Origin: Orbicella franksi
Taxonomy: Eukaryota
DNA length: 64,000 bases
Assembly (NCBI GenBank): GCA_964199315.1
Contig: OZ116698.1
Location: forward strand, 11,284,001 to 11,348,000
Reading direction: 5' to 3'
Shown: positions 1 to 24,400 of the stretch, piece by piece
Position numbering within the stretch: position 1 is the first letter of the stretch
How the letters are laid out: each line of letters starts with the position of its first letter
Made by a program: the position numbers and the translations under genes
Notes under the pieces: generated by a model
What the model saw: only the letters and a program-made list of their open reading frames with translations
Databases searched by the model: none
Told to the model about the DNA's origin: nothing

Positions 1-104
1 GTTAACTGCAACTGTAAAATTTATCTACTGTGTTAACTTAGCAAATAGCCTTACTCTCAGAGGAGAGCTAGGAACTAAGAGAGTTAACTTAGCAATCTTC
101 TTAC

Positions 105-3100
105 GTTGACACCCAGCAGAAGAGAATCCATAAAATCCATTATCACATGAGTCACATGTACGACCCACCACACCAGGCTGACAGTCACACTGGCCTCCAT
201 AAGCTTCACATTGTGAACCTGTCACACTACCAGTGGGCTCACAACCACATGCTGTACAAACAAAAAAGAAATTGTATAGGATTATCTTAACAAAAATATG
301 TACTATCGATTGCTATAAACCTACTTTTGAATACCACTAGGCTTCTTGCCTTTCAAGTCACTTTGAGGAAAGGCATAATAGAGAGAATGTCGTGAAACAA
401 AGGGGAGGATTTAATTTTTAGCCAAATCAGCTAGAACCTATGCAAAAAGAATGCAGTATTTATTATTCTTTTAACATGCAGACTCTCTTCTCTACAAATG
501 GAAGTAGCAAATAACAAAGTATATTTTCTCAGAAATCATACTGAGTCAACATTGTTGAAATGCAAACATCATCAAACTTTTAGAAAGGGTAAAAGTAAGT
601 AAGAACTTTATTTAAGTGTCAATGTATTTAGCCCATGTGGGCTAATTGGGGACACCCTATTAACTCTACCTAAAAATTTTTATTAATAGTATTATAAGAT
701 TCTCTTAAAAAAATAAAATTGAAATATCGGCAAACAATGGAAGGAAATAAAAGAGTATATGTTGTCCTAAGAAACACCTTAATTATAATGTTATATTAAT
801 TAAAGTTTAATATTCTAAAATTCTATATTAATGTACAATTAAAATTCAAAAAATTTGTCCTTTCTTCTTAATGGATGGGTGAGGCCTCTTATTTCAGGCG
901 AAAAAATTTACTAGCCGCACAGGTTTCCTTGGGTGGGTCAATAGAGCTTCTTTCACAAGACATACCCTAAATACATCAATAAAGAAATGAGAAGAGGTTC
1001 TCATAAGACATGCTGGTGTAGTGGATACTGCAATGCAAACTCCATATACACCAGTAGGTGTTTACAAGTGTCTAACTTTTTAGGGGGTAAAGGGGAATAG
1101 TAATTGGGTACTTACCCAAAGTACCATTGTATATCTCTGTACTAGCAGAAAACACCAGTTTATCACAATAAGCTGGCTCCTGTTCTGCAAGAGACAGAGC
1201 TGCCTGTTCACAGCTCTGCAGCTGATCTTGAATGTCTCTTCCTGACTCAGTGTACACCCTAGTTGCACTGACATCAGGAATCAAGACCACTGCATCAACA
1301 AGAATAGGACAGTAATCACCACCATCAGTGCTGTTGTAGATCAGTGAGATGTTGTACTTTTCACCTGACAGCAGTGCTACAGTTTGAGGTGACCTCCATG
1401 CCTGTCTTGAACCTTGTTGTAGCTCATCTGCAAAGACCTCAAATTCCACACTGTCATTTGAAATGGTGCTTCTGAGACTCAAAACAAGCTTTGCACCAAA
1501 ACCAAATGTGCAAGTCCTTGAAATGCTATAACGTATAATAACATGGAACTGATGGCTGGCAAAGACTTCAGCATCACTGATGTGAGCATACTGCCCTGGA
1601 TGGAGGGTGGCATAGCCATGGCCAGTGAAGTCTATTCCTTGGCCCTCAGAGGGAGTCAAGGTTGTGAAGGTGCCATCCATGTCTTCCACTTCAAACTTGA
1701 CAAAGTCCAATGCTGGATAAAAGTGCTCTCGCTGAGATCTTTCACACTGGCTCCCTTCAAGTCCAGGACGACAGAAACAAGTTCCTAAAACAGGACAATA
1801 AAAAAAGCTCATTGTGCTATGTTTTCCAAGAGTGGTTAAAGTTTAAAAGGGTGATACAGACATTTTTCACCAAACTTCTGAACAGTTGTCTTCATAAACT
1901 GCCCTAATCTTTCCAATTAATTTCTAAATGCTTCTAGTTATTCAGAGTTCTGAAGATGTGAAGAAATCACATCACTTATGCAGTGACATTTGGGCAACAG
2001 TTCACATCAACTGAAATACAGCCATAGCACTGTGGTTTTAAGATGATTTCCAGTCCGTATTGCACACTCTTGAGAGTTTGCTCTTTTTGTTTTGTTTCAT
2101 GTAAGAGACCACAAAATGGAAACATTTTGCAACTATTTACATGAAGTAAATTCAAAGTTTCAAAATAACTGCCATTATGAATGCAAAGCTTTTTGCTTTG
2201 TTCTTTCTCATATCACTTGATGAAACAACTTCGCAGCTGTAAAAATCAATGAAGCTGTTGGAAAAAAGAATTTGAAAGGCCTCAAAGATAAGGGATGTGG
2301 TTCATAACGAATAAGATCGATTTGCATCAGGGTGCTGAGAGGGTTATACCCCTTGTGCCCTCCCCCCCCCCCCCTGCAAACATTAAATTTATTAGTGCCC
2401 ATTTATACACCTGGGTAGAGAGAGGTGCTGTGAGAGTAAAGGATCTTGTCCAAGAGCACAACACAATGTTCCCAGCCATGGCTCGAACCTATGCCTTCCA
2501 CACTATTACATTATACACCACTAGTAATATACATTGTGCTCACCTGACACTTTGTCACACTGAGGGAAAGCCCCACCTAAATCACAGGGACACCGCAAAC
2601 AATCTGCATTCTCCGTAATTGGAAAAAAGTAAAAGCCATCTTTGCACTCCACACAGTATGTGCCTTGGACACTCCCCTTGCATGGACAGTCTCCTGTGTA
2701 CTGGTCACACTGTATGGTGTTGTTAACTGTACCAAGAGTATTGCACCCACAGGCTAATAGAGAAGGTTGACAGTATTCTCACTCTAGTACCAACGATATC
2801 AGCAAATCTAGACATCCAGTATCATTAAAATCTGGACCATTGGATAATGCAATTGAATAGTTTTCATTGGCTTAGCCATCATGGTATATGAGCAGTAATA
2901 TTTATATTATACCATGCTCTACAAATATAGTAAGTATATGCATAATTTTTGGGGCATTTCTTATTTGCATATTATTTTAGTTTTCTTTGTTTTTTGGGGC
3001 ATTTTTAATAAAACAATATTCCACTTGCACTTGTTGGATATTAGATGATTATAACCAACTTGGCAATTTGTACCTTGTTGGTTATCTATCATCTTGTACC

Positions 3101-6100
3101 CAATGTGCCCTCCTGGAATAATTGTTAATAATGATTCATGAGACATATTTGCTTGTGAAGGTTGATCAAGAAACATAACACAACACAACATCTCCCTGCT
3201 GGAAAAGATCCTCCAGTGTACAGGATTAGCAGTTTTTTAAAAGAGTAACTGCCATTGTGAGAGCTCATTATTCACAGAAATGTACTTTTTGGATGGAACA
3301 GCAAATGCATATGCAGGGGTTTCATTAACGTTTTCAGCAGGAGGGCAACTGGTTTTCACAGACGGGCAAAAATATTTAAACTGAAGTTGTTTGTAAGAAA
3401 AACTTTCTGCTAGATGGTTAAACTAGCCAGGCAAAATTGTCCTCACAGCCGGTCAATTTGCCCGGTACTCGGCGCTTAATGAAACTCCTGCATGTGGTTA
3501 TCAATAAAATATCATTTACAAAAAGACAAATTGTGACAAGTTTTCTTGAACTGTAAGTAGAACTACTATGTGTCAGACTAAGTCAAATGTTATGAGAACC
3601 CCAGGAACATATTTCAGTACTCCAAAATTCTGTGACTGAGTTTTTGAAACAAACCTAAATTTCCCAACATCCTGTGGAAAACAGTTAAAATAGCCTGCAA
3701 GTGCAGGCATATTTAGGGTGTGTGAGTGCACATTTTTGTATTAGACCACCATCTTGGATTTGGTGGAGGGTTGGGACGAAGGAAAATTTGCTGAGGGAGT
3801 AGCATCCAATTACAATCCAAGATGGCGGCATCAAAAACCTGGTTTATCAAGAGTAGGCTGCAGTTAAAAAGGATAGCTAACCTCTGCATTCTCCAGGTGG
3901 ATTTCCTCTGTATCCCCAGTAACCTGGAATACACTGATCACACTGCCGTCCAAACACGTTGTTCTTACACTGGCACTGCCCAAGCTGCTTTGTGGGTGTA
4001 GCTTCCTGCAGACATGTCCCGTCATTTGTAATACCCTCTGGGAAACAGTCACAAGCTGCAAAGAAAAATGTTCAGGTATAGATTTAAAAAGCCTTAAAAT
4101 GGACTTGGATATTAAAGTGCATGTCATAGGAAGTAACAAAAAAAGAACATAACATAAAATTCCAAGAGTAAGCACTTCCTTTCTCCCCCCGAAAAAAAAA
4201 AATTGTAATTATGAGCCCTACTGAAAGTTAGCACTTATTCTCAGATACAAAAATGCTTCTGATAATAAGCCTCCCAACCCTAATATTTATAAGCCCATGG
4301 CTTAAATTTAGATTTAGATTTAGCCACCACTTCTTCTTATCAATAAAAACCATCTATTGTAGTGCTTGTTTTGTATTTTATGCTGTTGGAGCATGTTCCT
4401 TGACTTGCAATGTTCATTAATAAGACAGTCACTGTAGAACTTCATTTGTACTTCATGTGTTATATTATATTTTGAGTGATGCTTGCATGCACCTAAATTT
4501 TGAACACACAACATCCCTTCCAAAATAATATACAAACATTGTTCAAAGCAAGTACAAAATCTCTTCAATGATAAGCACCTCCAGTGAAGTGCTCCCCCTG
4601 AAAAAAAATAAATATTAAGCCTACCCAAAAAGTTTACACCTGTACTGGATTAAATAATGCAAAGAAGGAATAAAATATACATTAATTGGATCTCATAATT
4701 TTTGAGATTTTCAAAACTTTTTGTGTACCAATTAATAAACCAGCACTCTTACCAATGCAAGCATTGAGATCCTCTATTGATACATCCATATTCCTGTAGT
4801 ACTTTGGTAAGCACTTCTCGCAGTGTTGCCCTTCAGTATTGTGTTGACAACTAGTACAAATGCCATGACTCAGAGTATTGTTGTACTCACAGGACAATCC
4901 ATGGTTATTGCACTGGCATTCTATACCACATCAAAACAAACACAGTCAAACAATTCTAAGCCAGAAAAAAAATCATTCACAACTACAATGAAAACAGTTT
5001 GAAGCTACATAATGAATCTAGGTATTTTCCATAATTTTATGATTACTAAAAAAAAGGAAGAAGTTTATTTACTGAGATACTACCTTGACATTCATTTGCA
5101 TGGCTGGCATTAGCTGGCATCCATGGATGATTATTGAATAGTGGCTTGCACATTTCACAATCATCTCCCATAGTATCGTGCTCACACTCACATGTTTCTT
5201 CCATGACTGGTCCAGTGCAATATTTAGCATGGCCATTACAGTTGCACCGTCCTGTAATCACAATATCTGAGATGGCGTAATAGTATTTGTTGAGAGTGCC
5301 CTCATTCTCAAATATATTTTCAAGCCCATCTGTGGGTGGGTACACAAGCCTGATCCGTACATTTGTTGCAAGCATGAAGTTCTGCATGTCTTGATCAAAG
5401 TAACCACAACCTGGTTCATACCGTGCATCAAATCTGTACTCCACCTTGCCATACCTTGGAGGGTATTGCCCACTATAATCCTCAGTACAGGTCACATTAA
5501 ATGGATGGTTTGTGAGGACAGCTGCTACTCCAGGCATGTTGAAAGAATCTGGGCACTTGAAAGCAAAATATTGCAAAACACTCCATGTTTTTCCAAAGTT
5601 TTTAGACTTCTCCAGGAACAAGGCCTGTGGTCTTTCATTGTAAAATCTCAAAGTGATACCACCACTTATGTGGAAGGTTCTGCCAAAAGACAATGTTATG
5701 TTTACCTTTAAAGGATTAAACCGACTTGAAAGGCCTAGGTTGTTTGTATCCCACCATGTTTGAGACTGCCACCAAGTTCCTGTTTGAGAGGAATATGGAT
5801 TATTAAATTCCTTGTTGTCAACCATATACTCTGGTGGGTGTCTTTTGGTAATGCTGTTTGCATCACATTCAAAGCATTGTTCCCCAGGCCCAAGTTCACA
5901 GAACCCACTAGCAGGTCTCCCACAGGTATTTGATGCTGAAATATTCCTCTTATATGCCATGTTGACTGGGCTTGGAATGCAAGGATGAGGCCGTCTCTGA
6001 GAATCATAGCACCCATTGAAGCTACAATCAGCAGCATCTATTGACACATTGAGTGAATACAAGAGAAACTGAATAAACAGTAAAACCACTGGCCTGTAAA

Positions 6101-6107
6101 TTTTCAT
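105..6107 (-). CDS. Laminin beta-like (beta/gamma-type) chain, 5' part: signal peptide, LN, LE repeats, laminin IV type B (LF) domain, further LE; continues beyond position 1
   Basis: In-frame GT-AG exons on minus: 6107-5084 (MKIYRPVVLLFIQ signal, LN, LE1), 4920-4753, 4055-3882, 2753-2544, 1784-1116 (LF: FYPALDFVKFEVED...LVDAVVLIP...CDKLVFS), 251-105 (CGCEPTGS...GQCDCQPGVVGRTCDSC, as in beta chains). All six introns are phase 1. An upstream in-frame ATG near 6149 is possible. Confidence 0.9.
2377..2489 (-). mobile_element. Partial copy of the same SINE
   Basis: CATTTATACACCTGGGTAGAGAGAGGTGCTGTGAGAGTAAAG..CTTGTCCAAGAGCACAACACAATGT..GGCTCGAACC matches 53107-53198. Confidence 0.75.
3311..3493. 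mobile_element. MITE with ATGCAGGGGTTTCATTAA / TTAATGAAACTCCTGCAT TIRs (laminin beta-like intron)
   Basis: 18-bp near-perfect terminal inverted repeats; a second copy lies at 19400-19561. Confidence 0.75.
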
Positions 6108-6845
6108 CTTGAAAGAAGCATTGCTCGAGAATCCAAACAAAAACATCACAGCTTATTTCAGAAAGAGTTTGACTGTCATCTCCAGCAGACGTTTAAAGTT
6201 TACATATGGGGAAAGACTACTGATTCAAGTGCTGATTGAAGTAGTGCAGCCTCGAATTAGTGGTGGTAAGCAATAATCTGATATACAGCTTAAAGGGAAT
6301 TCTCCAAATATGAATATGCTAATTTAAACACATTATTCATAATTCATGCCCAAAATTAATTAAATATGAGGTAGACACTATTTTGACATATTAGCGGCCC
6401 GAATCTACGAGACTTAAAAATTAAGAGAAAGGCATGTCAGCAAGTGCAAGTCAAGTCAAAATGGTTGCACTGCAAAGTGTAAAAGTTAATAAAGTTGCAT
6501 GTCAGAGCAACTAAAATGCAGTCAACGTCATTCAAATTAACAGTTACTAGAAGGCGTTTTGACATGTGCAATCACTTTACCTTCATTGATGTGTGTGTGG
6601 GCTTGACGCTGTGGTCAACATTTTGCAGTGTTTTGCAGGTACTTGAAATCCAACCAGTTGCAACTGACCGCGCGCGCACAGCAAAGAAACCGCGATGAAA
6701 TTTCCACTTTGACCTTCCCGTTACTAATGAAAAAGACTACTTCATCAAGAAATAATTGGTTATTTGTCGTTTTAAATAACTCCAGAGGGATTGCCCTTTT
6801 AGTTGAAGATTCGATGGACATAGCAGGAATCATGATCGAATTTTC

Positions 6846-6946: not shown

Positions 6947-9900
6947 AACGTTCTTCGGTGTTCAAGACATCTTTTAAGAAGACCAATCTGCTTGTGAGTA
7001 TTAATACTACTGAGTTATCTTCGTAGAATATCATGCAAAATAATTCATATATTATTTATTTAACTTTGCCTGTTCCTGATGATAACGTCGCCTTCTATAC
7101 AACCTTAGTAACCTCCAGTACCTACCAACTTGCACTTCGAATATGCTGTAAGTTACATAAATCTAAACTAACTTAAATATGACTTAATTGTTAACAGAAT
7201 CCCAAGACGATATGAACAGCACAGTATAGAAAAAGAACCAATAAAGACAACAGTGACTTTTATAACAGATGTCAAAGACAATCATGGTATTTTGAACACT
7301 CCGCCGTTTGTTACATCATACAGCAATCGCGGTTTTCATCTCAAGGGTATCAAAGTGTTCGGTTCTGTAGCAGTTCTTCCTTCAGCATTTTACCACTGGC
7401 GGGTAAGTTACTAGTGTTAATGCAGGATTTGTGCTTCGCATTTGAATGGAGGAACAATTTAACAAATTGATGTCAGGTTTTCATACGTGTGTCCTGATAT
7501 TGATCATGAATTTTGTCATAACATTGTCAAAGTAGCTGTGGATCCACGAGGTGATAGCCGAGTGGATCTGCAGACTACTTTGACAATGTTATGGCAAAAT
7601 TCATTGTCAATAACAGGACAGACGCATGATAAACTGACATCAATTTATTTTTACGGTAACTAATTGTTAAATTGTCCACTCTCACTCTTTGATGTATTGC
7701 ATAAATTATGAATTTGTGTGTCAGTGTGCATATTGACAATGAAAATTAGCCAATGAGCATGCATGAATTTCTGTAGTTATCGTAAAAAAAACATGATGGT
7801 TGGTGTACTGGCCCAGGGTGAAAGGGGGGGAGGGACTCCCATGTAAAAAGGACTGGAGTGCTCATCATACCTTTTAGGGATTAAAAAGGGGGTTTTGGTA
7901 ACTCTAAGGGTGTTCAGCCTCAAAAGGTCCACAGCACAAACTTTTGTGGTACCTTTTAAAGCATTGAGTCAAAAAAAATTTGACAGGAGATAATTTGTTG
8001 TTTTAGAATTGGTACCTCCTATGCCCGGTTCAAACGCCGTACTTCATATGAGCTGAATCAAATGCTAATGGGGGAGAACAAAGGATTTTTCTCATTTGCA
8101 TTCGACTCGGCTCATGTGAAGTGTGGCGTCTGAACTTGGCCTTAGGAGTGAAAAAACATTTCAAGCCACGCCCTCAAAACAGGATCCTGGTGCCTCTTAG
8201 AGGTTCTTTTTATCATTTCCGATAAGTATCCCTGTTCTTTTTATATGGGAGTCCCCCTCCTGGGGCACTGGACTCCAGATCAACAGGTCTAGGTTGAACA
8301 GCCTGACTGGTATCATTGTGTCTTAGGGCAATAGGGATGTCACTGATCATGAGCATTGGTTGCCAGCTAATTTCCCCTGCTGAAAGAGAACTTAAATTCG
8401 TCTAGAATTTCACTCAAAAACAAAGACTTGGGTTATCTTTGGAGGTGCAAAAGCTAGAAAAGCCAGCTGGGCTTTTTAATGAGCCAGCTTTGTGTTTTCT
8501 TGGCCACATGCCTTGGTTAAGACTCTTTTGATGGCTCCATAGGGTAATCATTTAAACTGAGTGATTACCCTATGGAGCCATCTGAAGTGTCTTAACCTAG
8601 GCATGCATTGGTGATATATTTTGAAAGCTGTTTTTTGTGGGCAGCAGGGATGGTGCAGTGGTGAGAGGGCTCGCCTCCCACCAATATTGCCTGGGTTTGA
8701 GTCTGGCCCGGTGCCATACGTGGGTTGAGTTTGCTGTTGGTTCTCAGTTTGCTCCAAAATCATATAAACTCTCAATTTTTTATGATTTCTTTGATACTGT
8801 TAAAAACTGGCAAACATAGTGATTTTCATCTCTAATGATAAATAATAGTAAAATAGGTGCACGACAGGATTTTAAAGTCATCACAAAACTGATAAAAATT
8901 TTAAGAATAAAACCAATAGATTACTGTCAGTGCATGTACTAAGGTTGTGGTAAGGTTTTCTTTTTCCAGGAATAAAGTGTGATCAATATGCTCAGTAGTA
9001 AAACTTGAAGTGAAGGATTTTTATTTTTACTTAATATATTACATTTTAAAGGTCGTAAAACCTGAAGATATAACTGCAGAGAGTCTGGCTCTTTTCACAA
9101 TAATGGAACCTCCTATAGGTATGTCATTTTCATAGATATCACACATTAACCACATTTTTCCATGGTCTATTACTATAAGTGTAAGTTTTTATTATCAGTT
9201 GATAGCGGAGCTCCTGCACACCGAAGGCACGCGAGCAAAGCCCTATACCTTAGAAAATTTGGTAACCTATCGACCTGAAAAATTTTGGTTGTCATGTGAC
9301 TGTCCATATGTACATATGTCCGTACATCTGTACACCACTACCTTGACAACTAAGAGAGTAGCACCATTACCATAGCTACATCTTTGATTTTGGGCATCCA
9401 CGCTATTGTCAATTGACAGCTGTCACAACAAGCTATCCACTGACCAGTATCATGTGACTATATCGTGGGCTCAGGTTTAGAGCTCTTCGAGGTTTTGTGT
9501 TTTTTAAAGTTGACCACTGAGCAATTACTGGTTTACCGATTGGATCGCGGGCTCAAGTCACATTATTTCTCTGGGGAAGAAGGAAGGAGTACTCGCAAAG
9601 GCAAAATTTTTGAGGGCAAATTAATCCCTGGCGTGCTGTTGACTTTTCTTCTGACATATCCCTTGTACAATGGTCTCTTGGAAAGTCCCTGATATATTGC
9701 ATACGTAATTTCTACAATCTTGGTTAGGCTTGTTGGGTATAGTTTGTTAAAATTTAGCTGGAAAAAATAGCAAGACCACATGCTAAACAATTACATGCTC
9801 ACAATTGATCATTTTTTTTGAGTGTCTGATCCAATAAAAATTAATCCTCTTTTTCCTTTATTGTCAGTTATTGCAATCAGGAGCTCCCCTTTAGGCTTGG

Positions 9901-11249
9901 CTAAATCTATATATTAGTTAGTAAGGTGGTGAGCAAGATGAGTTGGCATATCATTCATAGAGAAAAGGAGATCAAGTGTGCATGTGATTGTGGTTTAAGA
10001 GAAATGTCAATGATAACAGAACTAGTCAGATTCAAGGATCTAATTAAATGTTAGAGTGCAGACCACATCTTTGATGGTCAATGCATTCATCAAGTTAATC
10101 TGATGACTAATGATAATATTACTGGTCATTAGATTAGTCCAATACAAATTTTCAGCACTGGACAATTTTGCCATGTCTTGTATGTTTTAAGGGTTGCTCT
10201 TCAAATGTTGTTGATATCCTCACTTCCAAGGGATTAGTTTTCTTGAGTTAATGGTGTCATCCTAGGGGTGGGGGTACTCAAGGAAGAAAGAGATTGCAAG
10301 GTGCAAATAGCTTAACACCCCCTCCCCCCTTGAGGCATGTGATTTCATTTGGTTTAGTTTGTGAGAACATTATTTAACATTAACTTTCAAAGTTAGTGAA
10401 GCCAAAATCTTTGGAAAGTGTGCTCCAGGTGTATTGTCAGTGGCCTATGTACATGTTCTCAAAATCTTCACTGTAGCTAGCTATAACAGTGTAATCATTA
10501 CATCTTAACTTTTCATTGATATTTGTTTAGAAATTGTGGTCGTGGGGACAGGAGAGAAGATATTACGTTTAGACCCTGAAATTCGCAGCTATTTGAAGAA
10601 GCATAACATTCTCTTGGAAGTTCAGGATACAGTAAGTTTTGTTGTTCAACTTGACCCACTCATGGAAATTTGAGAGAACTTGAAAAATCTGAGGAAATAC
10701 TTACCTGTCGGCTTGTGTTCCCACAGTATTTGTCATTCTCCCAAACTTCCACTTATGTTTTTATAAGTCAATAGAAACACGGTACATGTTTTCTATTTCT
10801 TAAATAGTGCCACTGAACATTCTTACGTGTCACTGATATTTTTACTCAAAGAGACATGTCTTAGACTCAACAAAACATTTCAGACAACACTCTTAAGAAT
10901 AACAAAAGAGAAACGTATTTCACTTAATTTTTGCCAGAGTCATACTACTTCATAGCCAGCAATTTTAGTCCAGATAACACTTGAGGCTCTTCACTATATC
11001 TCACCTGATCATAAAAAAATCCCCATAAAGCCTGAGTCAGGCTGACCTGAAGTTTTTTTCCCCTGGCTTTCTTTACAACTGTGTATGTGCATATAACTGT
11101 GACTGTATCTTCTTTTAAGCTATGTAAAATTCTATCTAAATGATGTTATTTTCTAGGCAAATGCAACTGCTACATTCAACTTTCTTCTTGAAGAAGCAAG
11201 GCTGGTCGGGGGTGCTTTTATACCACCACGGACAGTAGAGGAAGACTGA
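6941..11249 (+). CDS. NDUFAF3: NADH dehydrogenase complex I assembly factor 3 (Mth938 domain)
   Basis: Not in the ORF track; five exons 6941-6993, 7198-7402, 9052-9118, 10531-10631, 11157-11249 join in frame: MANVLRCSRHLLRRP (mitochondrial-type presequence)...SYSNRGFHLKGIKVFGSVAVLP...EPPIEIVVVGTG...LEVQDTANATATFNFLLEEARLVGGAFIPP*. These match NDUFAF3 family motifs. Confidence 0.93.
7459..7790 (-). mobile_element. Interspersed repeat/MITE family member (TTAACAAATTGACGTCAG end), copy 1 of 3
   Basis: Reverse-complement similarity to 30082-30402 and 51378-51820 (CATAACATTGTCAAAGT, TGACAATG, CTCATTGG.TAATTTTCATTG). Confidence 0.75.
7812..8264. mobile_element. MITE with CCCAGG..GGAGGGACTCCCATGTAAAAAG / CTTTTTATATGGGAGTCCCCCTCCTGGG termini
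   Basis: Clear terminal inverted repeats in NDUFAF3 intron 2. Confidence 0.7.
8646..8758 (+). mobile_element. tRNA-derived SINE head fragment
   Basis: A-box-like GATGGTGCAGTGGTGAGAG and a degenerate B-box GGGTTTGAGTCTGG; no cloverleaf 3' end. Confidence 0.6.
9185..9915 (+). repeat. Probable interspersed repeat in NDUFAF3 intron 3
   Basis: GCGGAGCTCC at the start and GGAGCTCCCCTTTAGGCTTGGCTAAATCTATATATT at the end resemble a repeat recalled from coral genomes; single copy in this window. Confidence 0.35.
10655..10805. repeat. Degenerate palindromic interspersed repeat
   Basis: GGAAATTTGAGAGAAC...TTCTCCCAAACTTCC arms; related sequence near 54465-54540. Confidence 0.5.
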
Positions 11250-12329
11250 CAGCCAATCTGCGACAGTAAGAAAAGATGTTGATTGTGCAGTGAACTACAG
11301 CTGAGAGAGCTCCTAAATATCATGCAGGCACTGAAAGATGGCAATAACACGAAGGGAACTTTTGACAACTCACTCATTTCAGTTATTTGAAATCTCTTTA
11401 TCTTCAATGGTAAAGCAGGAGACTTATTTAATAACGCAATTTCTTGGACAATAGAAAGGAGGTAAAGGCTTGTCATAGACCAGTACATAACAAGACATTG
11501 TCATTCAATACTATGAGAATGAACTAAAAGTAATTGTCTGTACTGGAGGAAGCTCTTCAAAATTGTTGTGCTTTTCCTATTGGAAAGCTTTGTACCAGAG
11601 AGAACTGAATTTTGTTCAGTCCTGGCTAGCTCCTTCATGCAGAATCACTAAGCAAAGCCCTGTAAAGACAATTTTGGGAATGTTAAGACAATTCATGTGC
11701 ATTCTGGTATTTTAAACAATTGCTGAAAAGTTATCTTCATATCATCACGATGGTGGCTGAATGTTTTTGCTACAGGCTTAGTGTAGTTGCAGCAGTCCAG
11801 CAATTACAAGAGGTTAAGTGGTTCTGATTATAAAGTTAGATAGGTCGGTTCTAAAGAACCAGATTAACTATACGGATCTTAGATTTGAGCACCATGCACA
11901 GTATCTAGCCACAAATTTTAACCCATGAAAGTACAAAAATCAGCCTGTGCACCCTCACCACTTTCATGTGGGATTCTGAGGGACAAAGGCTTGACAGAGA
12001 GTTGTGACAATCCAAGCTACTATGCAGCATCACTACTATTGCTTTTGTGCATGTTTTTTTTTTTTTTATTGTGTAAAATCATCATTTGAGTTTTTAGGTC
12101 GTTTTAAGACAAGTCTGTATGTAACAGAACCACCTAAAATATCTTAGTTTAGCTCTATCATTGTTTTAAAGACTAGTGTATCCTTGGTTCATTAAATAAA
12201 TGCACTTGTTAAAGATGTTGTTGTGCAGAGTTAAAATATTCAGCAGGTCACAAGTATGGGAGAAAGGAAAAATCTGAGTCCCCAATGAGATTCAGATCGC
12301 AAGTTGGGAACTCAAATCATTTGGTTATA

Positions 12330-15272: not shown

Positions 15273-15428
15273 TTCCGTCCCGCTGAAGAATGCACACTAA
15301 AGTTTATAATTCACACAGGTATCCGTAGATGTCTGGCATATCACATATATCAAATATCGTGAAATTCCCCTCCATGCATGATCCGCCGTTCGCCTACCGA
15401 AGATTACGAGCATAACACGAGAGGGATC

Positions 15429-18400
15429 ATGGAGGTGTGCTGTCATTATCGTGCGAAGAAACATTGGAAGAGTTTTTCGTCTGTGCTAAGACTTCTGGCC
15501 CTGCTCCTGTTTGTCAGAGAGATTGATAGTCAATCTCCATGCTATAACGAGATCACTAAAGCTCCTCTCAGATGCATGCCTTCTTTCGGCAACGCTGCTT
15601 TTGGCAAGACAGTTATTTCTAACAACACTTGTGGGACGCCTCCGAGCGAGTTCTGCGTTCAAACCGGCGTCACTTCACCCACGAAGGAATGCGAAGTTTG
15701 CGATGCAACAGAGGATAGGTACAGCCATCCCGCGTCTTACATAACGGACATAAAAGATGATCAAAACAGAACCTGGTGGCAGTCAGAGACACTGCTTGAC
15801 AACCCGGACAAACCCGTAACTCTTACCCTGGATCTTATGAAAAGCTTCGATGTGTCTTATATCAGAATTCGTTTTCGATCGCCAAGACCTGAGTCGATGG
15901 CAATTTACAAGCGAACCAGCACCGATCCGAACGGGCCGTGGATCCCATATCAATATTTCTCAGCTTCGTGTGAGAAAACTTACAAGGTGAAAAGTAATGA
16001 CATTGCGATAACAAATCAGCAAGTATTGTGCTCGAACGAATTCAGCAGCATTTCGCCGCTAACTGGAGGCAATGTTGCGTTTACTACATTGCAAGGTCGA
16101 CCGGATAACCTCAATTTTGATAACAGTCCTGAATTGCAAGACTGGGTTACGGCGAGCTCGATCCGAATAGATTTGGATCGGATGAATACGTTTGGAGACG
16201 AAGTGTTTGGTGATTCCAACGTTTTGCGGAGTTACTACTTCGCTATTATAGATTTGACAATCGGAGGACGTTGTAAATGCAACGGGCACGCTGCAGAGTG
16301 CATGGAGAAACAAGATACTTTAGGACGACTTGAGCTGAGGTGTATATGTGACCACAGAACGATGGGAGTAGACTGTGAAAAATGCGAACCGCTTTACAAT
16401 AATCGCCCATGGGCCAGGGCTACAGAGAATAGTGCCAACGAATGCATCAGTAAGTACATTATTTTCTGTATTCATGGACTTACTTCAGGTATATCCTTTT
16501 ATTCTGCTCGCCAACCCTGTCAGCGCGAGACAAGTAAATTTGACGCTTATCTTGCGGTAAATCAAGCTGGGTTGGCCAATAGCCTGCAGCGCTGCAGATG
16601 ACCTGCTTAATATAACCTCACTGCATTTTTAAAGAGTTAAAGTTCGCACCGTTTTATACTAGATTTCTTGAACCTTTTATTTTTTAGTCAAGCTCACGCA
16701 TTATCTGTCCTTCACTCTCTGAAAACCACGAAACCACTCAAAGGTCCTGAAACAAATGTTCGATTTCTCAGACCGGAAGTCAACCTTCTCGAATATACAC
16801 GGTTTCTGCGGCTTGTTTCGTGACGGGGTGGAGGTTTACAAAGAGCATTTGATCGCGCCGGAATGAAGGAATCCAGGTTTTCTTTTTGTGTATTTACGTT
16901 TGAACAGTCAAAATTCCTCCATAAATCAATTTGGTTTTCCATTTTCTCTGATACAATAAATATCAAATTTATTATATATTGGCAATTTTTTTACAACCTC
17001 CGATGTGTATTACTGACACTAATTTATTACGCATCCACTTCAACTATACTTGAGATTCAAGGAAAAATGGCTGTTATCTGCCTGTGTATCCACACATCCA
17101 CTTCAGAGTCTCGCTCTATGTGAACGCATGAATGGATAATTACATCCAGTGTTCTTAATTTCTTTGTGATTATGAACGAACAAATGGATTTATTGTGATT
17201 CTGTACAGTGTACAGCTTAGCCCCTAAAAGTGTAAAATACCACAACCAGTTTAAGGACTCATCTGCTTGATATTATGTCTGTCGTTTTGTGTAATACCAG
17301 GGATGATACTTGGTCCCACTGTAAAGTACACAAAAATGTGTCATGGAATATACAGACATGAAGAGAATGGATTGCATGATGAGCTTGGCTTTCAAAGCTC
17401 ATTTGATAAGAGAGTTGAAAGATCAAAGATGTTATATTGATAGGTTAAGCAGCTGGTGGCCTCAGCTTTGTTATATAGGAGATTAAGAAAATGTTCAGGT
17501 GCTTGCACTCGTTTCTTATGTGTAAAAACTTGACAGAATTTTGCTGAAAGGAGTTTTCCAGATGCTAATGTGTTTGAGAAATTCCATCAAGGCGAGTGTT
17601 TTTTTATAAAGACTTGCACAGTTCTAAATTTTTTGTAGTTAATCACTGAATGCTAGGTTGTGCCAGGGCTGCTGCATATGTCACTTGATCAGACAGCCTA
17701 ATCATATAACTTGCAGAAACCTTCAGAATTTGTTGAACAGGATGAGGTTTACTCTGCCATTAATTTGCACAAACTAATGTCAGATGACTTGTTATTCAGG
17801 TGAACATTGTGACATATATCTGCTTCTCACAGATATCTAGAGAGTGGTATACTGGTAGGACTCATTTTGAGTCACACAAGGCAAACAGTCACATCTGTGT
17901 AACAGAAACCAGTTGGGTGGTTTGTTGATTACTCTAATCTACTTCATATGATGTATATTTGGGATCACAAATTATATCACCCTTTGTGTGTGGTTTGTGA
18001 ACAAGACACCCCGAGTAGTATAATTACATGTGAACTTCATAAATCAAATTCCTATCTCTATCTGCTGAATGGTATTTACAGTATTTTTGGTTAAACATGT
18101 ACCTGAAATATTCTAGACTCTGCTACTAGGTTTAAACAACTTCAGAATGAGATTATTTTCACACTGGTAACATAGGCTTTAGTGTTGCAATGCCTCCTGT
18201 GTTTTTCTTCTTAGAACGTGACTTAGGTTTTGACCTTTCTAGCAAACCTTCTGTAGCTGGGATTTCAAGTGTACACACTTACCGGTTTAAGTATGGGAAA
18301 CTGCATAATGTATTTGCAAAATAGGAAAACAAAATGGCATAAAATGATCAACCTGTTTTTGCAATCAATTTTCTAACAAAATATCTGACATGTACTACCC

Positions 18401-21400
18401 TAAATTCAGTGGGTTTCAGACTGGAATGTTTAATTGATACTATAAATATGATTTGTGGCACCTTCCTAGGTTTGTCAAATTCCCTCATTTTGTAGGGACA
18501 AGAATTGGTTACTAATGTCAAAAATTTATATTTAGTACTGGGAACCCTGGAATTTGTAGTTAGAATTCCTGTAAGTCTTCCTAGTAAGAGCACATTTTTT
18601 ACAACTCTGTAGAAGTCTGAAAGGGCTTTTTGTGACTGATAAAATATATTTTCTGTATGGCTGTTTCTTTAGAGTGCGACTGTAGTGGTTTAGCAGACAG
18701 TTGTGTGTATGATGAGAACCTTGGCTATGGACACTGTGAAAACTGCAAGAGAAATACAGCTGGTCCAAAATGTGAACGATGCCGTGACAATTTCTTCCGC
18801 CTGACTTCTTCAGATGACTGTCAGCCTTGTAAGTGTGACCCTGTGGGCTCAGTGTCATTACAGTGCGATCCAACAGGCCAGTGCACCTGTAAACCTGGAG
18901 TGACAGGTGTCAAATGTGACAAATGCCAGGCAGACTACTTTGGCTTTTCACAGACGGGTTGTAGGTAGGTTTACTAAACAAAATTATTGAAAACAGACAT
19001 TTGACATCTTTTGGATACTTCCTCTGCAACAATACCTCATCTTCTGCATCATGCGAGCTTCAGTTTTCTTGTGCTCCTTTTTCAGGCCTTGCCAGTGTTC
19101 TCCTGAAGGAACTGACCCCAGTAACACGCAGTGTAATGAGAAGGGGGAGTGCTCATGCAAAAGGAATGTCATTGGTGCCAAATGTACACAGTGCAAGACA
19201 GGCTTCTATGGATTGGAGAGTACAAACCCACATGGATGTAAACAGTGCTTCTGTTATGGACACAGTAGTGTGTGTGAGGCAGCTATGGGTTATACTGGAT
19301 ATAACATTTCAAATCAGTTCTCGTCAGGTCGAGAAGGTTGGACTGTTATCAATGAACAAGGTACATGTTATAATTCTGCCAATATCCTGAGGGTGTAGAC
19401 AAGGGCTTCATTAACGATTTCAGCCGGAAGGCAACTGGTTTTTATGGGCGGGCAAACCTTTTTGAGCTGAACTTCTTTTTAGAGAAGTTTTCCTCTAGAT
19501 GGTCAGACGGGGCAGGCAAAATTATCCTCACAGCCAGTCAATTTCCCAGTGCCCGGCCCTTGACTGCAATGGACTCCAGATTGACATATTAGAGAAGTAA
19601 TGACCTACGTCACCAGCATGTTAAACTCTGAATCAGGCAGTCTTGGTTTGGCACTAGCCAGAGTTATCTTGTGTTTTTAGTCCTTGCAAGCACCAAGTGA
19701 ATTTTTTGCTTATTTTGCAAAAATGTCTGTCATCAATTCTATGTTACATTTAATTTAGAGCTAACTGAAACAGTGATTTTCAGCCCTATAAATTTTGTTA
19801 ATTCTACCCAAAGGTCAAAAGTGCCATTGTACTACTTCTGTGCAGGTAAAACTGGCAGGTCTGTCAATCAACTTAAGAGAAAAGATCAATTAAGTTGTTT
19901 CATGATGAACAGATAGTGTTTAATCTTGTAGGTGACTGACATTTTACAGTTAACAAATAATTTGGTATTTTGAAGCACAGACACTTTTATACTTTCATCA
20001 AATCCAACATTGGTTGAAGATTTGTTTTGATTTTTGGTAGAGCCAATCAAATCTTGTCAGTCTAGTGTGAATGAGCCCTGGTGCCTTGTAGTGCCTCTGT
20101 CCATCAAGGTTATAAATAGAGATAGATATCGGCATGCTGTTACAGTAGCCTGACACAATGCTGGAAAGGGTCTAAGGACATTGATCGGGTTGTTGTTTTT
20201 GTGTGTTGATTTTCATGGGACTACTGATGTTCACTTTTCAAGTACATGTACCTCTCTACATGTACATCCATTGGCAGAATCTTGATGTAACATACCTTAT
20301 AAACACAGGCTGCCCATGACTTGCGGGCTTGAAAAAATACATAACTTTACTGTTAAATCTAAGCTTGTTTATGCATTCATTTTTTTTTCTGTTGCAAACA
20401 TTTTAGCACTATTGTAATCACTTTTGTTGTGTTGGTCATCATTTACTCGACTTTTCTCATTTTTGTTCATATTTTGATATTGTTGTGCTTATCTTATTTC
20501 AACAGGTACTAATGTAACTGAGCAGTATATCATCCTTCGTGAATCTTCCCACATCAGCGTAACAGCTGTAGGAAATGAAGTCCTTTATATATCAGCCCCA
20601 GATAAATTTCTTGGAGACCGCCGCAGCAGTTATGGCCAGCTCTTTGGGTTTACCTTCCGTGTGGCTGCAACTGAAGGAGTTCAGGTGAAACCAGGAGACA
20701 TTATTCTGGAGGGAAAGAATGGACTGAAGGTCTCTGCAAGGCTCAATGCACAGAACAACCCTGTTCCTTCTACCACTTTTCAAAACTATCTGTTTCGTCT
20801 TCATGAAGACCCATCTTTGGGATGGGAACCACTGCTCAGAGGGTTTGACTTCCAAAAACTCCTAACCAGTTTACTAGCCATTAAAATTCGAATGAACTAT
20901 GCATCTCAGGGGACTGGCTTGATTGACAATGTTTTCATGGAGTCAGCAGTATATTTACCACAGTCTCTTTTACGTGTTCCTTGGGTTGAAGAGTGCAGCT
21001 GTCCAGCTCCTTACACAGGAGATAATTGTGAGCAATGTAGTGTGGGCTATACCAGACAGAGAGGATCCGAGGATAAATATGGCCAGTAAGTAATTTATGT
21101 CAAAAAATCATACTGTGAAGTGTTCCACCTTGACAAGCTGGATTTTGAATATTTCAGCACTCAATGAAAGGCAGTGTTCAATCTAGAATAGGTCAAAGTG
21201 GGTCCTATGTCCTACTTGACGTTTTAAATTGGGAAGATGCATAAATGACTAAGGATGACTCCATGTGACAATGTCAGCCACGTGTCTGTTAAGAGGGGAT
21301 TGACTGAATTGCAAACAGTCTTTAGTTAATAAATCCTTCCATTTCTAGTTTTTGCAGCTCTTTCTTCAATGGGCATGGCACCCTTAACCCTTCTTTGTTT

Positions 21401-24400
21401 TTAGGTGTGTTCCCTGCCAATGTTATGGTCACTCTGAGTCATGTGATCCAGTGACAGGTGTTTGCTATTGCCAAGACAACACAATTGGTGACAACTGTGA
21501 GACATGCAAAGAAGGTTTCTATGGTAATCCAACTGAAGGTACCAAAGATGACTGCAAACCATGTCCCTGCAAATATGGTTCCCGTTGCATTCTGATAGGC
21601 GAGAATGTTGTTTGCACAGATTGTCCTGAGGGACACTTAGGGGATCTCTGTGAGTACTGTCAAGATGGTTACTATGGTGACCCATCGGGCCTTTTGGGTT
21701 TGCCAACTGCTTGTCAGAAGTGTAACTGCAGTGGCAATATAGACTTCAATGCCATTGGGAACTGTCAATCTCTCACAGGCGACTGCTTAAAGTGTATTTA
21801 CAACACTAGGAATGGCCCGCTTGAGAGATGTGAACTTTGTGCAGTTGGGTTTTATGGAAATGCTACTGAATATCCAAAGCCACAGTGCATTGGTAAGTAA
21901 TGGAAACTTAAACTGTACACACACACACTTAACTTCAACTGCATTTAGAGACTAATGCAAGTGTAAAACTGATCCCCTGGTAGCATAATTGGCAATGTAG
22001 TTGTCAAATACAGAGATAATGTGCTGTCCAAGGGTGTGGCTTACCTGGTGTCTGAGGAAGCAAGCACCAGCATCACCAAGCAGGGCTAAAGGTGGAACCA
22101 ATGGGGTAAGCAAAAGAGGGTCAGAAGTGGCTTGCAGGCTTTAACTGCTACTAGCTGCTGAGAGAAGCACGTGAAGGGAAGGGGTGGAAAGGCAACTTAA
22201 AAGATTCATGCCCCACATGGGGTGAAAGGATTTAAAGAAGAAGGAGATATTGTGGCTAGGGTGCTTTTACAATTGTTTTCTTTTTTCGGTCAAGGGTAGT
22301 TTTAAGTTGTGGAACTTTCATCGTAGAGGTGCTTCTACTCCAAGCTACTTTCTGTCCTTCTTGTGAACATTTTGCCTCTTTCTGTCCTCCAGCTTGCAAC
22401 TGCTACAATCAAGGCACAATGACCCCTCCTGACCACAACCCGGAGTATCCCCTCCCTTGTGACGATAAAGGCAAGTGTACTTGCTTGGAAAATGTTATTG
22501 GAGACAAGTGCGATAGCTGCCGAGATACCTACTGGAATGTGGGCTCAGGAGTTGGCTGTGAGCAGTGTTTGTGCAATCCCATTGGCTCTCTAAACAATAG
22601 TTGTGAAGTCATTATCGGCCAGTGTCCGTGTAAACCTGGGGTGACTGGAAGGACATGTGATCAATGTCAGTCAGACCATTACGGGTACTCAGACCAGGGC
22701 TGTGAACGTAAGTAGAATGAGAATACCAGATGACGATGCGTATACCTATTTCTATAAACCTCGCAATGTTTTGAAAGAGGACTGGAAGGCATGAAAAGCT
22801 TGAAGCTTGAAAATCTTTTTTGGCGTTCGTTCAGCACCCAGCCAAGGTTCTTGGCGCAGCTAGTAATCATACACGTTGTAGATATGTGCTTCGTAATCGC
22901 TTTCTACTCTCTTTGATAGGGAAAAAATCGGTGGATAATGTACACACATTGGACGTTTGCATTTTTATGTCTTGCACGAGATACCCCTTCAGTTTCATGT
23001 TTGAGCGACGTTTTACTTCATGCCGAGAATGTTCAAGATTGTCGAGTGTGCACCAGCGGATGCACGCTTAAAAAACAGTTAACGTGGACCTCTTCAGTAA
23101 AAACCCCTATTTTGGTTCTTTCTTGTTAATCTTCACCTCTTTTGTTCTTAGGGATAGGGGCATTGTTTGTGTTTTTTCGTTTGGCCAATTATAAAGAACC
23201 TTAAATTGTAAACGGTACTGGTCGCAAAAAAACTAAGATTCGGTTATCTATCCACTCTCAGTCTTATCTCAATATACACTTAGTTTACTACAAAATTCTG
23301 ATAATATACTTTGGGCGTGGTCGTACAAGTATTTTTCTTCAAAAGTTATTTTTGTTGAGCTTATTTTAGGTGGCTTTGTTGCCAGAGGAGCTAATTATCA
23401 GTGGGATTTTGGTGTGTGAGATATCTGTTTGGTGTTGTGTGGGATGTATTATAGAAATCTTTGTAAACTTTATCGTGTTTCTTTTCTCAGCTTGTAACTG
23501 CAACCCAGAAGGTTCTCTTAATGTGAGCTGTAATGAATACGGAGAATGCAACTGCAAGTTTGGAGTACTGGGCATCAAGTGTGGTACATGCGAGGAAAAT
23601 AAACATAACTTGACTGCCGGCTGTGTCAGTAAGTACTGCTACAATGCTGAAATAATAATAATAATATTAACACAATAGCCAGGCAATCTTAGGCCCTGTC
23701 ATCACTAATCCGTCACGAAACAGGAGCTTTTCGAAAACGCTCTTCAAACCGGAGGATTTTGAAAATGAAGTTATATTTCTACGGTTCGGACCTATCGTCT
23801 ACACTAGTCCGTCACGAAAACGGATCTTTTCCCATAACCGCTCTTCAAACCGGAGGAATTTGAAAACGCCGGCTTTTCAATTTCGTGTAGTCGGAAAATA
23901 TTAAGAAAACGGAACTTTTCGAAAACGATATCGTCAAGATAATCATGGGATTACGGTAGCAGTAGTGGATGTAATAATGCTTGTGATATTTTTTTCGCCG
24001 TAGGTTGCCCGCCATGTTATAGCGAAATCCAACGATTAGTTAACCGCTTGCGAATAAACATCCGAAGGCTCGTGAAGATCATGAACAACTTCAACTCGAG
24101 CTCAAGCGGACAACTTGTCGTGGATGCGAACTTTGAGCGTCGCCTGAAGGAATTGACGGAAGCAGTGAATGAACTGCTCAACAAGGCAGAAAGCTCGAAC
24201 TCTACAGACAAAGCCCTACAGGAGCAGCTTCAGGTCTTGGACAGCCGTGTGGAGAAAATAAATAAGGTCATATCGGATGTGTCCAACAACACGAGCGAGG
24301 CGGAAGGGATCATAGCCAGTGCGCTGGGGAATATATCTGAAGCCGAGGCGTCGATCAATCGATCACGTGCATTGCTTGACGAGGCAGAGAAGCTGTTACT

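What the first reader, a model, noticed from the sequence alone, without database searches (positions are those of the whole stretch)
5084..6107. Full-length laminin chain whose LN domain looks like Netrin-G rather than laminin beta
Seen: the middle of the gene is beta-type (LF domain after ~4.5 LE repeats), but the LN lacks recalled beta hallmarks (CYPATGDLL, EPSTEGEV). Instead it reads ECDA..HPPEYM.D, WQSQTW, PLKVNITLSFGRT, I.L.F..ERP..LFLEKS.NFGKTW..LQYFA..C.DSF.M, CTEDYS..Y, RIRL..P, YYYAISDI...GRCNCN.HA..C...TCECEHDT.G.DC. These track recalled NTNG1 motifs (HPPELMFD, WQSATW, PLQVNITLSWSKT, RPDQMILEKSLDYGRTW, CTEEYS, YFYAISDI..GRCKCNLHA, CECEHNTTG). Established: Netrin-Gs are GPI-anchored vertebrate synaptic proteins thought to derive from a laminin independently of netrin-1, and a fourth, beta/gamma-like chain class is known from some invertebrates. 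Inference: this gene is a living representative of the laminin lineage that gave rise to Netrin-G.
Basis: partly seen in the sequence, partly recalled or inferred. Interest (0 to 1): 0.85.

Follow-up and report, generated by a model that had tools for sequence, protein, structure and literature searches.

The report
Coral hybrid laminin chain, netrin-G's cousin

Summary
Window 6107..5084 (minus strand) is the first coding exon of a spliced, transcribed laminin gene. It encodes a signal peptide, an LN domain (Pfam 8.7e-54) and LE1. Five further exons carry LE2-LE5, a beta-type LF domain and LE6, and the gene then runs off the window start.

The LN is not beta-type. Raw scores are netrin-1 175, netrin-G1 168, gamma-1 161 and beta-1 119 bits, so raw similarity alone does not single out netrin-G.

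Maximum-likelihood trees do. The coral LN sits in a clade with bilaterian laminins that carry both LF and L4 domains and with all netrin-Gs (support 99-100). Netrin-G groups with the bilaterian members, and the coral gene lies one step further out. The coral's own canonical gamma chain, 9 kb away head-to-head, falls in the gamma clade.

- Grouping with gamma is rejected (AU p=1e-4).
- Grouping with beta is only marginally disfavoured (p=0.05-0.10).

This is the published "laminin beta/gamma-like" class (Fahey & Degnan 2012). Its link to netrin-G was shown by Leclère & Rentzsch 2012, so this gene is an ordinary new member of a known kind.

The scan had already noted this gene pair and its hybrid architecture (s1-243897, s1-223832). 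One extra result: the order beta/gamma-like | NDUFAF3 | gamma is conserved with Nematostella.

The parts
5084..6107 (-). Coding exon 1: signal peptide, LN domain, LE1. It ends in phase 1 at a GT donor.
   Evidence: ORF and sequence. Pfam Laminin_N 8.7e-54. tblastn with the Stylophora orthologue P0151, residues 1-340, 71% identity. The 5084|4920 splice joint is seen in RNA contigs and reads.
6108..6300 (-). 5' UTR, at least to 6300. It holds an in-frame upstream ATG at 6146 that would add 13 residues.
   Evidence: The RNA contig in run X1 covers 5084..6300 without a break and runs on 39 nt further. The ORF listing shows the upstream in-frame Met. The orthologue alignment starts at 6107.
4753..4920 (-). 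Exon 2: LE2
   Evidence: Pfam EGF_laminin. Splice model. Joints 4920|5084 and 4055|4753 in RNA contigs of X1 and X8.
3882..4055 (-). Exon 3: LE3
   Evidence: tblastn with P0151 residues 397-454, 84% identity. Splice model. RNA joints.
2544..2753 (-). Exon 4: LE4 and the start of LE5
   Evidence: tblastn with P0151 residues 455-525, 83% identity. Splice model. RNA joints 2753|3882 and 1783|2543.
1116..1784 (-). Exon 5: end of the truncated LE5 plus the whole LF domain (laminin IV type B)
   Evidence: Pfam PF21199, 9.6e-10, 38.7 bits against a cut-off of 27. The only PDB hit is laminin beta-2 LE5-LF-LE6, 5lf2, E 5e-6. phmmer hits outside the class are all canonical beta chains.
104..251 (-). Exon 6: LE6. 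The gene continues beyond the window start.
   Evidence: Pfam EGF_laminin 1.1e-09. tblastn with P0151 residues 748-797, 78% identity. The X1 RNA contig runs on a further 943 nt past exon 5.

Best explanation
The finding is the N-terminal exon of a stony-coral orthologue of the 'laminin beta/gamma-like' chain. This is a secreted laminin subunit of about 1,750 residues.

Its short arm has a mixed make-up:
- an LN domain of its own clade, overall closest to gamma-type LN domains;
- LE1-5, then a beta-type LF domain inserted after LE5;
- more LE repeats, then (seen in orthologues only) a gamma/alpha-type L4 domain and further LE repeats.

In orthologues the long arm starts with a CxxC pair. It continues as a cysteine-poor stretch of about 580 residues that I take to be coiled coil, and it ends in a C-terminal cysteine.

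Inferred mechanism: the chain enters a three-stranded laminin coiled coil in the place of a beta or gamma chain, is disulphide-locked at both ends of the coil, and offers its LN domain to LN-LN polymer nodes in the basement membrane or mesoglea.

Evolution: the same lineage in bilaterians gave rise, by truncation after LE3 and gain of a GPI-anchored tail, to chordate netrin-G. The coral gene is a co-orthologue of bilaterian beta/gamma-like laminins and netrin-G together.

Shown here: the domains, the splicing, transcription and clade membership. Inferred: trimer assembly and polymerisation.
For: - Domains in the window.
- Splicing and transcription: a 3,420-nt RNA contig joins exons 1-5 at exactly the predicted GT..AG sites, and a second run agrees.
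- Orthologues: Stylophora P0151 (71% identical over the LN, 1,776 aa), Montipora P0152 and Nematostella P0001. Each has LN, about 10 LE, LF near residues 550-740 and Laminin_B/L4 near residues 913-1040.
- Bilaterian members with the same double LF+L4 architecture: P0026 and Antedon, Acanthaster. Some have no LF hit on record (Patella, Ptychodera) or no L4 hit (Saccoglossus, Branchiostoma P0114).
- ML trees: the clade of coral clade + bilaterian beta/gamma-like + netrin-G has support 100/99, 99/99 and 100/99. The same window's canonical gamma LN (398 bits to gamma-1) falls in the gamma clade.
- The AU test rejects union with gamma, p=1.4e-4.
- Saccoglossus, Ptychodera and Branchiostoma each have a canonical beta as well as a beta/gamma-like gene, so the two classes are separate paralogues.
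- Tail features: CxxC, a Cys-poor stretch of about 580 aa, a terminal Cys, and no six-cysteine L-beta knob.
- Literature: PMC3516229; review PMC10084454.
Against: - The L4 domain, the coiled coil and the C-terminus lie outside the window and are known only from orthologues.
- Pairwise scores do not distinguish netrin-G from netrin-1 or gamma-1.
- The AU test does not firmly reject the coral clade joining beta (p 0.094, 0.10, 0.052).
- No cnidarian canonical beta and no netrin-4 sequence could be put in the tree.
- The LF match in orthologues is below Pfam's cut-off (21.7-23.4 bits).
- I found no functional study of any member of this class, so trimer partners and polymerisation are inference.
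- The clade that holds the window gene includes unnamed metagenome and transcriptome sequences whose organisms I did not determine.
Confidence: 0.85

Rival explanations
1. It is simply the cnidarian canonical laminin beta chain, with a fast-evolving LN that is misplaced by the tree.
For: An LF domain sits in the beta position. NCBI names the orthologues 'beta-1-like' and 'beta-2'. The AU test cannot firmly reject coral clade + beta (p 0.05-0.10). Beta as sister of the whole beta/gamma-like + netrin-G clade is nearly as likely as the best tree (delta lnL 1.9, p 0.29).
Against: All three ML trees separate it from beta with 99-100 support. Orthologues carry an L4 domain that beta chains lack and lack the L-beta cysteine knob. 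The LN scores 119 bits to beta-1 against 161-175 to gamma-type LNs, and the beta hallmark strings are absent. The same architecture coexists with a true beta in three deuterostomes.
Confidence: 0.07
2. It is a recent or lineage-specific divergent copy of the neighbouring gamma gene, made by inverted local duplication, that picked up an LF domain.
For: It lies head-to-head about 9.3 kb from the canonical gamma gene. Its raw similarity is gamma-type. Orthologues carry L4.
Against: The AU test rejects coral clade + gamma (p 1.4e-4). The window's gamma LN sits in the gamma clade, far from it. The class exists across Bilateria. The arrangement is shared with Nematostella, so any duplication is ancient rather than lineage-specific.
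Confidence: 0.05
3. The locus makes a short netrin-like or netrin-G-like product (LN plus a few LE) that acts as a cue or adhesion ligand rather than as a laminin chain.
For: Many database entries for this exon are short, 330-440 aa. The clade is shared with netrin-G. In vertebrates, LAMA3 is known to produce a short netrin-like LaNt splice form (abstract of PMC7710073).
Against: The short entries are exon-1 fragments of short contigs. RNA contigs splice exon 1 on to the LE and LF exons and beyond. No cluster of transcript ends was seen (table 6). Orthologues are 1,735-1,776 aa long.
Confidence: 0.03

Closest known systems
Laminin beta/gamma-like chains (Fahey & Degnan 2012, Mol Biol Evol 29:1823; used in Leclère & Rentzsch 2012, PMC3516229)
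   Same: The LN falls in this clade with 99-100 support. An LF sits after LE5, and orthologues add L4 and a long Cys-poor tail. The class is reported from eumetazoans including cnidarians, and netrin-G nests in it.
   Different: Nothing essential differs. This coral copy is not individually described, and public annotation of its orthologues calls them beta-1-like, beta-2 or alpha-3-like. I could not read Fahey & Degnan itself, because it is not in the held library, and I rely on papers that cite it.
Netrin-G1/G2 (laminets), chordate GPI-anchored presynaptic proteins
   Same: They share the LN/LE clade and a few derived residues (M of HPPE.M, second W of WQS..W). Identity over the LN is 35-37%.
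   Different: Netrin-G stops after three LE repeats and has a unique C-terminal domain and a GPI anchor. The coral gene continues with LE4-5, LF and LE6, and in orthologues with L4 and the coiled coil. Netrin-G is closer to the bilaterian beta/gamma-like laminins than to the coral gene.
Laminin beta-1/beta-2
   Same: An LF domain is inserted after LE5 (5lf2 is the only PDB match to exon 5). The tail has a CxxC pair and a terminal Cys.
   Different: The LN belongs to another clade and scores 119 bits. The beta hallmark strings are absent. Orthologues have L4 and lack the L-beta knob.
Laminin gamma-1 and netrin-1
   Same: The best raw LN scores are to these (161-175 bits). They share general gamma-type LN motifs. 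L4 is present in orthologues, as in gamma chains.
   Different: The AU test rejects a clade with gamma. An LF is present. The true gamma orthologue is the neighbouring gene at 15378 onward (398 bits to gamma-1).

Membership tests
Laminin beta/gamma-like class | LN(+LE) domain falls in the beta/gamma-like clade, apart from alpha, beta and gamma | tested here: met
   ML support 100/99, 99/99 and 100/99 in three data sets. The AU test rejects gamma but only marginally disfavours beta.
Laminin beta/gamma-like class | Beta-type LF domain in the short arm | tested here: met
   PF21199 at 9.6e-10, 38.7 bits, in exon 5. Match to 5lf2.
Laminin beta/gamma-like class | Gamma/alpha-type L4 (Laminin_B) domain further along the same chain | not testable with these tools
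   That part of the gene lies beyond the window start. It is present in the orthologues P0151, P0152 and P0001. An earlier scan note (s1-223832) reports it in the adjoining window.
Laminin beta/gamma-like class | C-terminal coiled-coil long arm with flanking cysteines | not testable with these tools
   It lies outside the window. The orthologues have CxxC, about 580 Cys-poor residues and a terminal Cys. Coiled-coil propensity itself was not computed.
Netrin-G | Short protein: LN + three LE, then a unique C-terminal domain and a GPI anchor; no LF, L4 or coiled coil | tested here: not met
   Exon 1 is spliced to LE2-LE5, LF and LE6 in RNA. Orthologues are about 1,750 aa long.
Netrin-G | LN in the netrin-G clade proper | tested here: not met
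   The netrin-Gs form their own clade (95/94) beside the bilaterian beta/gamma-like chains. The coral gene lies outside that pair.
Laminin beta | Beta-clade LN with hallmark motifs; LF; no L4; L-beta cysteine knob in the coil | tested here: not met
   LF is present. However, the LN is outside the beta clade and the hallmark motifs are absent. Orthologues have L4 and no knob.
Laminin gamma | Gamma-clade LN; L4 and no LF | tested here: not met
   AU p 1.4e-4 against a gamma clade. LF is present. The genome's gamma gene is the neighbour.

The most novel reading that the evidence does not exclude
The cluster beta/gamma-like(-beta/gamma-like) | NDUFAF3 | gamma, conserved between a stony coral and Nematostella, may be a relic of the local duplications that created the laminin chain classes. 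If so, the same ancestral linkage might survive in vertebrates as the neighbourhood of NTNG2 and LAMC3 on human 9q34. That location is from my memory and was not checked here. It would give netrin-G's origin a physical, syntenic trace. The class could also form a laminin trimer of a so far uncharacterised composition in cnidarian mesoglea.
Probability: 0.15. Interest if true: 0.45.

Novelty: new member of a known kind. Interest (0 to 1): 0.2.

Why it matters
Little is new for netrin-G's origin. That netrin-G derives from the beta/gamma-like laminin class was published in 2012 and is repeated in a 2022 review. The use of this report is mainly corrective.

- **Annotation.** The gene and its orthologues are mislabelled in public annotation as beta-1-like, beta-2 or alpha-3-like, and should be named as the fourth laminin class.
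- **Open function.** I found no functional study of this class in the papers searched. Corals and Nematostella express it, so Nematostella knockouts could show what a fourth chain does in a basement membrane.
- **Synteny.** The conserved head-to-head linkage with the gamma gene gives a modest new handle on how the laminin classes arose.

Tried and rejected
- **Missing tree members.** A netrin-4 sequence and a cnidarian canonical beta could not be obtained. The third protein search listed only bilaterian betas among its best 120. Netrin-4 is represented only by its PDB score of 83 bits.
- **Failed look-ups.** The look-up of encoding contigs had no record for the Stylophora orthologue P0151 or for the chordate-like gamma P0031. 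Synteny in Stylophora and the position of an amphioxus gamma gene could not be checked.
- **Unfinished test.** The 68-row result stands.
- **Amphioxus tandem test.** I looked for a tandem origin of netrin-G. The beta/gamma-like gene (2.6 Mb) and the netrin-G-like gene (12.4 Mb) share chromosome CM033048.1 but lie about 10 Mb apart, which is not informative.
- **Bilaterian gamma neighbour.** Acanthaster, Patella and Ptychodera show no gamma gene within 10 kb of their beta/gamma-like gene.
- **Not attempted.** Structure prediction, because LN folds of all classes are too alike to discriminate. Fahey & Degnan 2012 is not in the held library.
Full report
**What is there**

The minus strand of window 6149..5046 is one long ORF. 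From the ATG at 6107 it encodes a hydrophobic signal-like leader, a complete laminin N-terminal (LN) domain (Pfam PF00055, 8.7e-54) and the first laminin EGF-like repeat. The exon ends at 5084 at a GT donor.

I mapped the rest with tblastn, using the 1,776-residue Stylophora orthologue P0151, and then chose splice sites. This gives six minus-strand exons in the window: 6107-5084, 4920-4753, 4055-3882, 2753-2544, 1784-1116 and 251-104. Together they encode 797 residues without a stop: LN, LE1-4, a truncated LE5, an LF domain and LE6. The gene then leaves the window.

**Expression**

A 3,420-nt assembled RNA contig from a coral metatranscriptome (run X1) covers 6300..5084 and joins 5084|4920, 4753|4055, 3882|2753 and 2543|1783. 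Each joint has CT..AC on the plus strand, which is GT..AG on the gene strand. The contig runs on for a further 943 nt past exon 5. A 940-nt contig from a poly-A library (X8) shows the first three of these joints and, with a short 38-nt overhang, the fourth. A few raw reads of a 2026 run show two of them. The gene is therefore real, transcribed and spliced as modelled. Depth is low.

All quoted strings are present, at residues 80-317.
- The recalled netrin-G1 strings are accurate: 6 of 7 are exact in rat netrin-G1.
- The recalled beta hallmarks (CYPATGDLL, EPSTEGEV) are found in beta-1/beta-2 and are absent here.
- The LF call is right. PF21199 scores 38.7 bits against a cut-off of 27.
- The only solved structure matching exon 5 is laminin beta-2 LE5-LF-LE6 (5lf2, E 5e-6), aligned end to end.
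- Within my protein set, the only hits to the LF outside the gene's own class are canonical beta chains.

Most of the 'netrin-G' motifs are general features of gamma-type LN domains. Lingula gamma-1 and macaque netrin-1 have HPP..L.D, VN.TL, YFYAISD and GRC.CNGHA too.

Raw scores against solved structures:

| Protein | Bits |
|---|---|
| netrin-1 | 175 |
| netrin-G1 | 168 |
| gamma-1 | 161 |
| netrin-G2 | 135 |
| beta-1 | 119 |
| alpha-5 | 118 |
| netrin-4 | 83 |

. BLASTP gives the same picture: 35-37% identity to netrin-G1 and amphioxus netrin-G, 33-34% to gamma and netrin-1, and 28-30% to beta. 'Not beta' is therefore clear. 'Netrin-G rather than any other LN' is not visible in raw similarity.

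**Relatives and architecture**

A full HMMER scan of 1.84 billion representatives found 1,363 LN proteins. The nearest named full-length ones are:
- Stylophora 'alpha-3-like' (P0151, 71% identical over the LN);
- Montipora 'beta-1-like' (P0152);
- Nematostella 'beta-2' (P0001, 49%).

Each has LN, about ten LE repeats, an LF near residues 550-740 and also a Laminin_B/L4 domain near residues 913-1040. Among the bilaterian members, an unnamed JGI protein (P0026) and Antedon show both domains, as does Acanthaster. Patella and Ptychodera have L4 on record but no LF hit. Saccoglossus and Branchiostoma P0114 have no L4 hit. Beta chains have LF only and gamma chains have L4 only.

In the orthologues the last LE is followed by a CxxC pair, about 580 residues with a single cysteine, and a cysteine as the last residue. 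There is no six-cysteine L-beta knob such as the beta chains in the same comparison show. This fits a laminin long arm. Those parts are outside this window.

**Phylogeny**

All trees used IQ-TREE with LG+C20+F+G4 (PMSF), 1000 ultrafast bootstraps and SH-aLRT.
- LN+LE1, 68 rows: a branch with support 100/99 separates {the clade holding the window gene, 16 rows; bilaterian LF+L4 laminins; all netrin-Gs} from {alpha, beta, sponge, netrin-1, gamma}.
- Adding eight more beta chains and the LN of the gamma gene in this same window gives 99/99. That gamma LN falls in the gamma clade at 100/95.
- LN+LE1-3, full-length rows only, 447 columns: the branch has 100/99, bilaterian beta/gamma-like + netrin-G has 97/94, and the netrin-Gs have 95/94.

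The coral gene is thus a member of the lineage that includes netrin-G. Netrin-G is nearer to the bilaterian members than to the coral gene.

AU tests:

| Group held together | p-AU | Delta lnL |
|---|---|---|
| coral clade + gamma | 1.4e-4 | 71 |
| coral clade + beta (68 rows) | 0.094 | 9.4 |
| coral clade + beta (77 rows) | 0.10 | 7.8 |
| coral clade + beta (LN+LE1-3) | 0.052 | 21 |
| whole beta/gamma-like + netrin-G clade + beta | 0.29 | 1.9 |

Union with gamma is rejected and union with beta is only marginally disfavoured. Beta as sister of the whole clade is as good as the best tree, which would fit a single origin of LF. The deep order of the classes is therefore unresolved, and the tree is unrooted. 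No cnidarian beta and no netrin-4 could be included.

Only four columns are diagnostic.

**Comparison with the literature**

[quoted passage not shown] A 2022 review repeats this (PMC10084454). The coral gene is one more member of a described class.

**Mechanism**

Shown: it is a secreted-type, multi-domain laminin short arm, transcribed and spliced.

Inferred from orthologues and from established laminin biology: the chain joins a heterotrimeric coiled coil, disulphide-linked at both ends. Its LN takes part in calcium-dependent LN-LN-LN polymer nodes. Whether it substitutes for beta or for gamma is unknown. The missing L-beta knob and the L4 domain look gamma-like, and the LF looks beta-like.

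**Surroundings**

Head-to-head with this gene, on the plus strand, lies the coral's canonical gamma chain.
- Its first coding ORF is 15378-16601. The LN scores 2.6e-78 in Pfam and 398 bits to laminin gamma-1.
- LE exons follow, then L4 at 20661-21089, more LE repeats, and coiled-coil-like ORFs to about 28282.
- Between the two genes, tblastx finds the exons of a DUF498/NDUFAF3 homologue on the plus strand, at about 7223-11261.

Nematostella has the same order and orientations, plus a second LN-LE-LF-LE-L4 gene in tandem. Two earlier scan notes describe the same things (s1-243897, s1-223832). I confirmed the gamma gene, the NDUFAF3 gene and the LF+L4 architecture independently. The coral's tandem second copy I did not see.

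In deuterostomes the beta/gamma-like gene sits next to an M16 peptidase gene instead, and no gamma gene lies within 10 kb.

**Verdict**

The gene is a new member of a known kind, and interest is low.

Noticed in passing
window 15378-28282 (+): The canonical laminin gamma gene lies head-to-head with the finding's gene, about 9.3 kb ATG to ATG. Its LN scores 398 bits to laminin gamma-1. L4 is at 20661-21089, and coiled-coil-like ORFs run from 24048 to 28282.
   Followed up: yes
window ~7223-11261 (+): Exons of a DUF498/NDUFAF3 homologue lie between the two laminin genes. The order and orientation (beta/gamma-like | NDUFAF3 | gamma) are identical to Nematostella chromosome OW051992.1 (L001). This microsynteny is therefore conserved between anemone and stony coral.
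   Followed up: partly
L001:28297-34756 (Nematostella): A second LN-LE-LF-LE-L4 gene (1,855 aa) follows the first in tandem. An earlier scan note says this coral also has a tandem pair, just beyond the window start.
   Followed up: no
L002, L005, L007 (amphioxus, Acanthaster, Ptychodera): In three deuterostomes the beta/gamma-like laminin gene has an M16 peptidase gene (PF00675/PF05193) immediately upstream. In amphioxus a second LF+L4 laminin (2,217 aa) lies beyond it, head-to-head.
   Followed up: no
L004:34179-35981 (Branchiostoma belcheri CM033048.1): About 8 kb from the amphioxus netrin-G-like gene lies a 600-aa LRR + Ig protein. Vertebrate netrin-G ligands (NGL/LRRC4) have this make-up. 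It may be a linked ligand-receptor pair.
   Followed up: no
P0099 (Glandiceps talaboti, 975 aa): A hemichordate protein at the base of the netrin-G clade (95/94 support, long branch) combines LN + LE + EGF with a tyrosine-kinase domain (PF07714, 6e-70). It is either a receptor kinase with a netrin-G-type ectodomain or a fused gene model.
   Followed up: partly
P0039 (Priapulus caudatus, 634 aa): An ecdysozoan LN-LE fragment falls in the bilaterian beta/gamma-like clade. The 2012 papers state that the class is absent from ecdysozoans.
   Followed up: no
window 2062-2592 and 3301-3477: Intron stretches have very high word depth in RNA contigs (up to about 5,000 against about 20 on the exons) and many loose ends. 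This looks like copies of an abundant repeated element.
   Followed up: no
window 6144-6146 (-): An in-frame ATG lies 13 codons upstream of the ATG at 6107, inside the transcribed 5' region. The true start codon is not settled.
   Followed up: no
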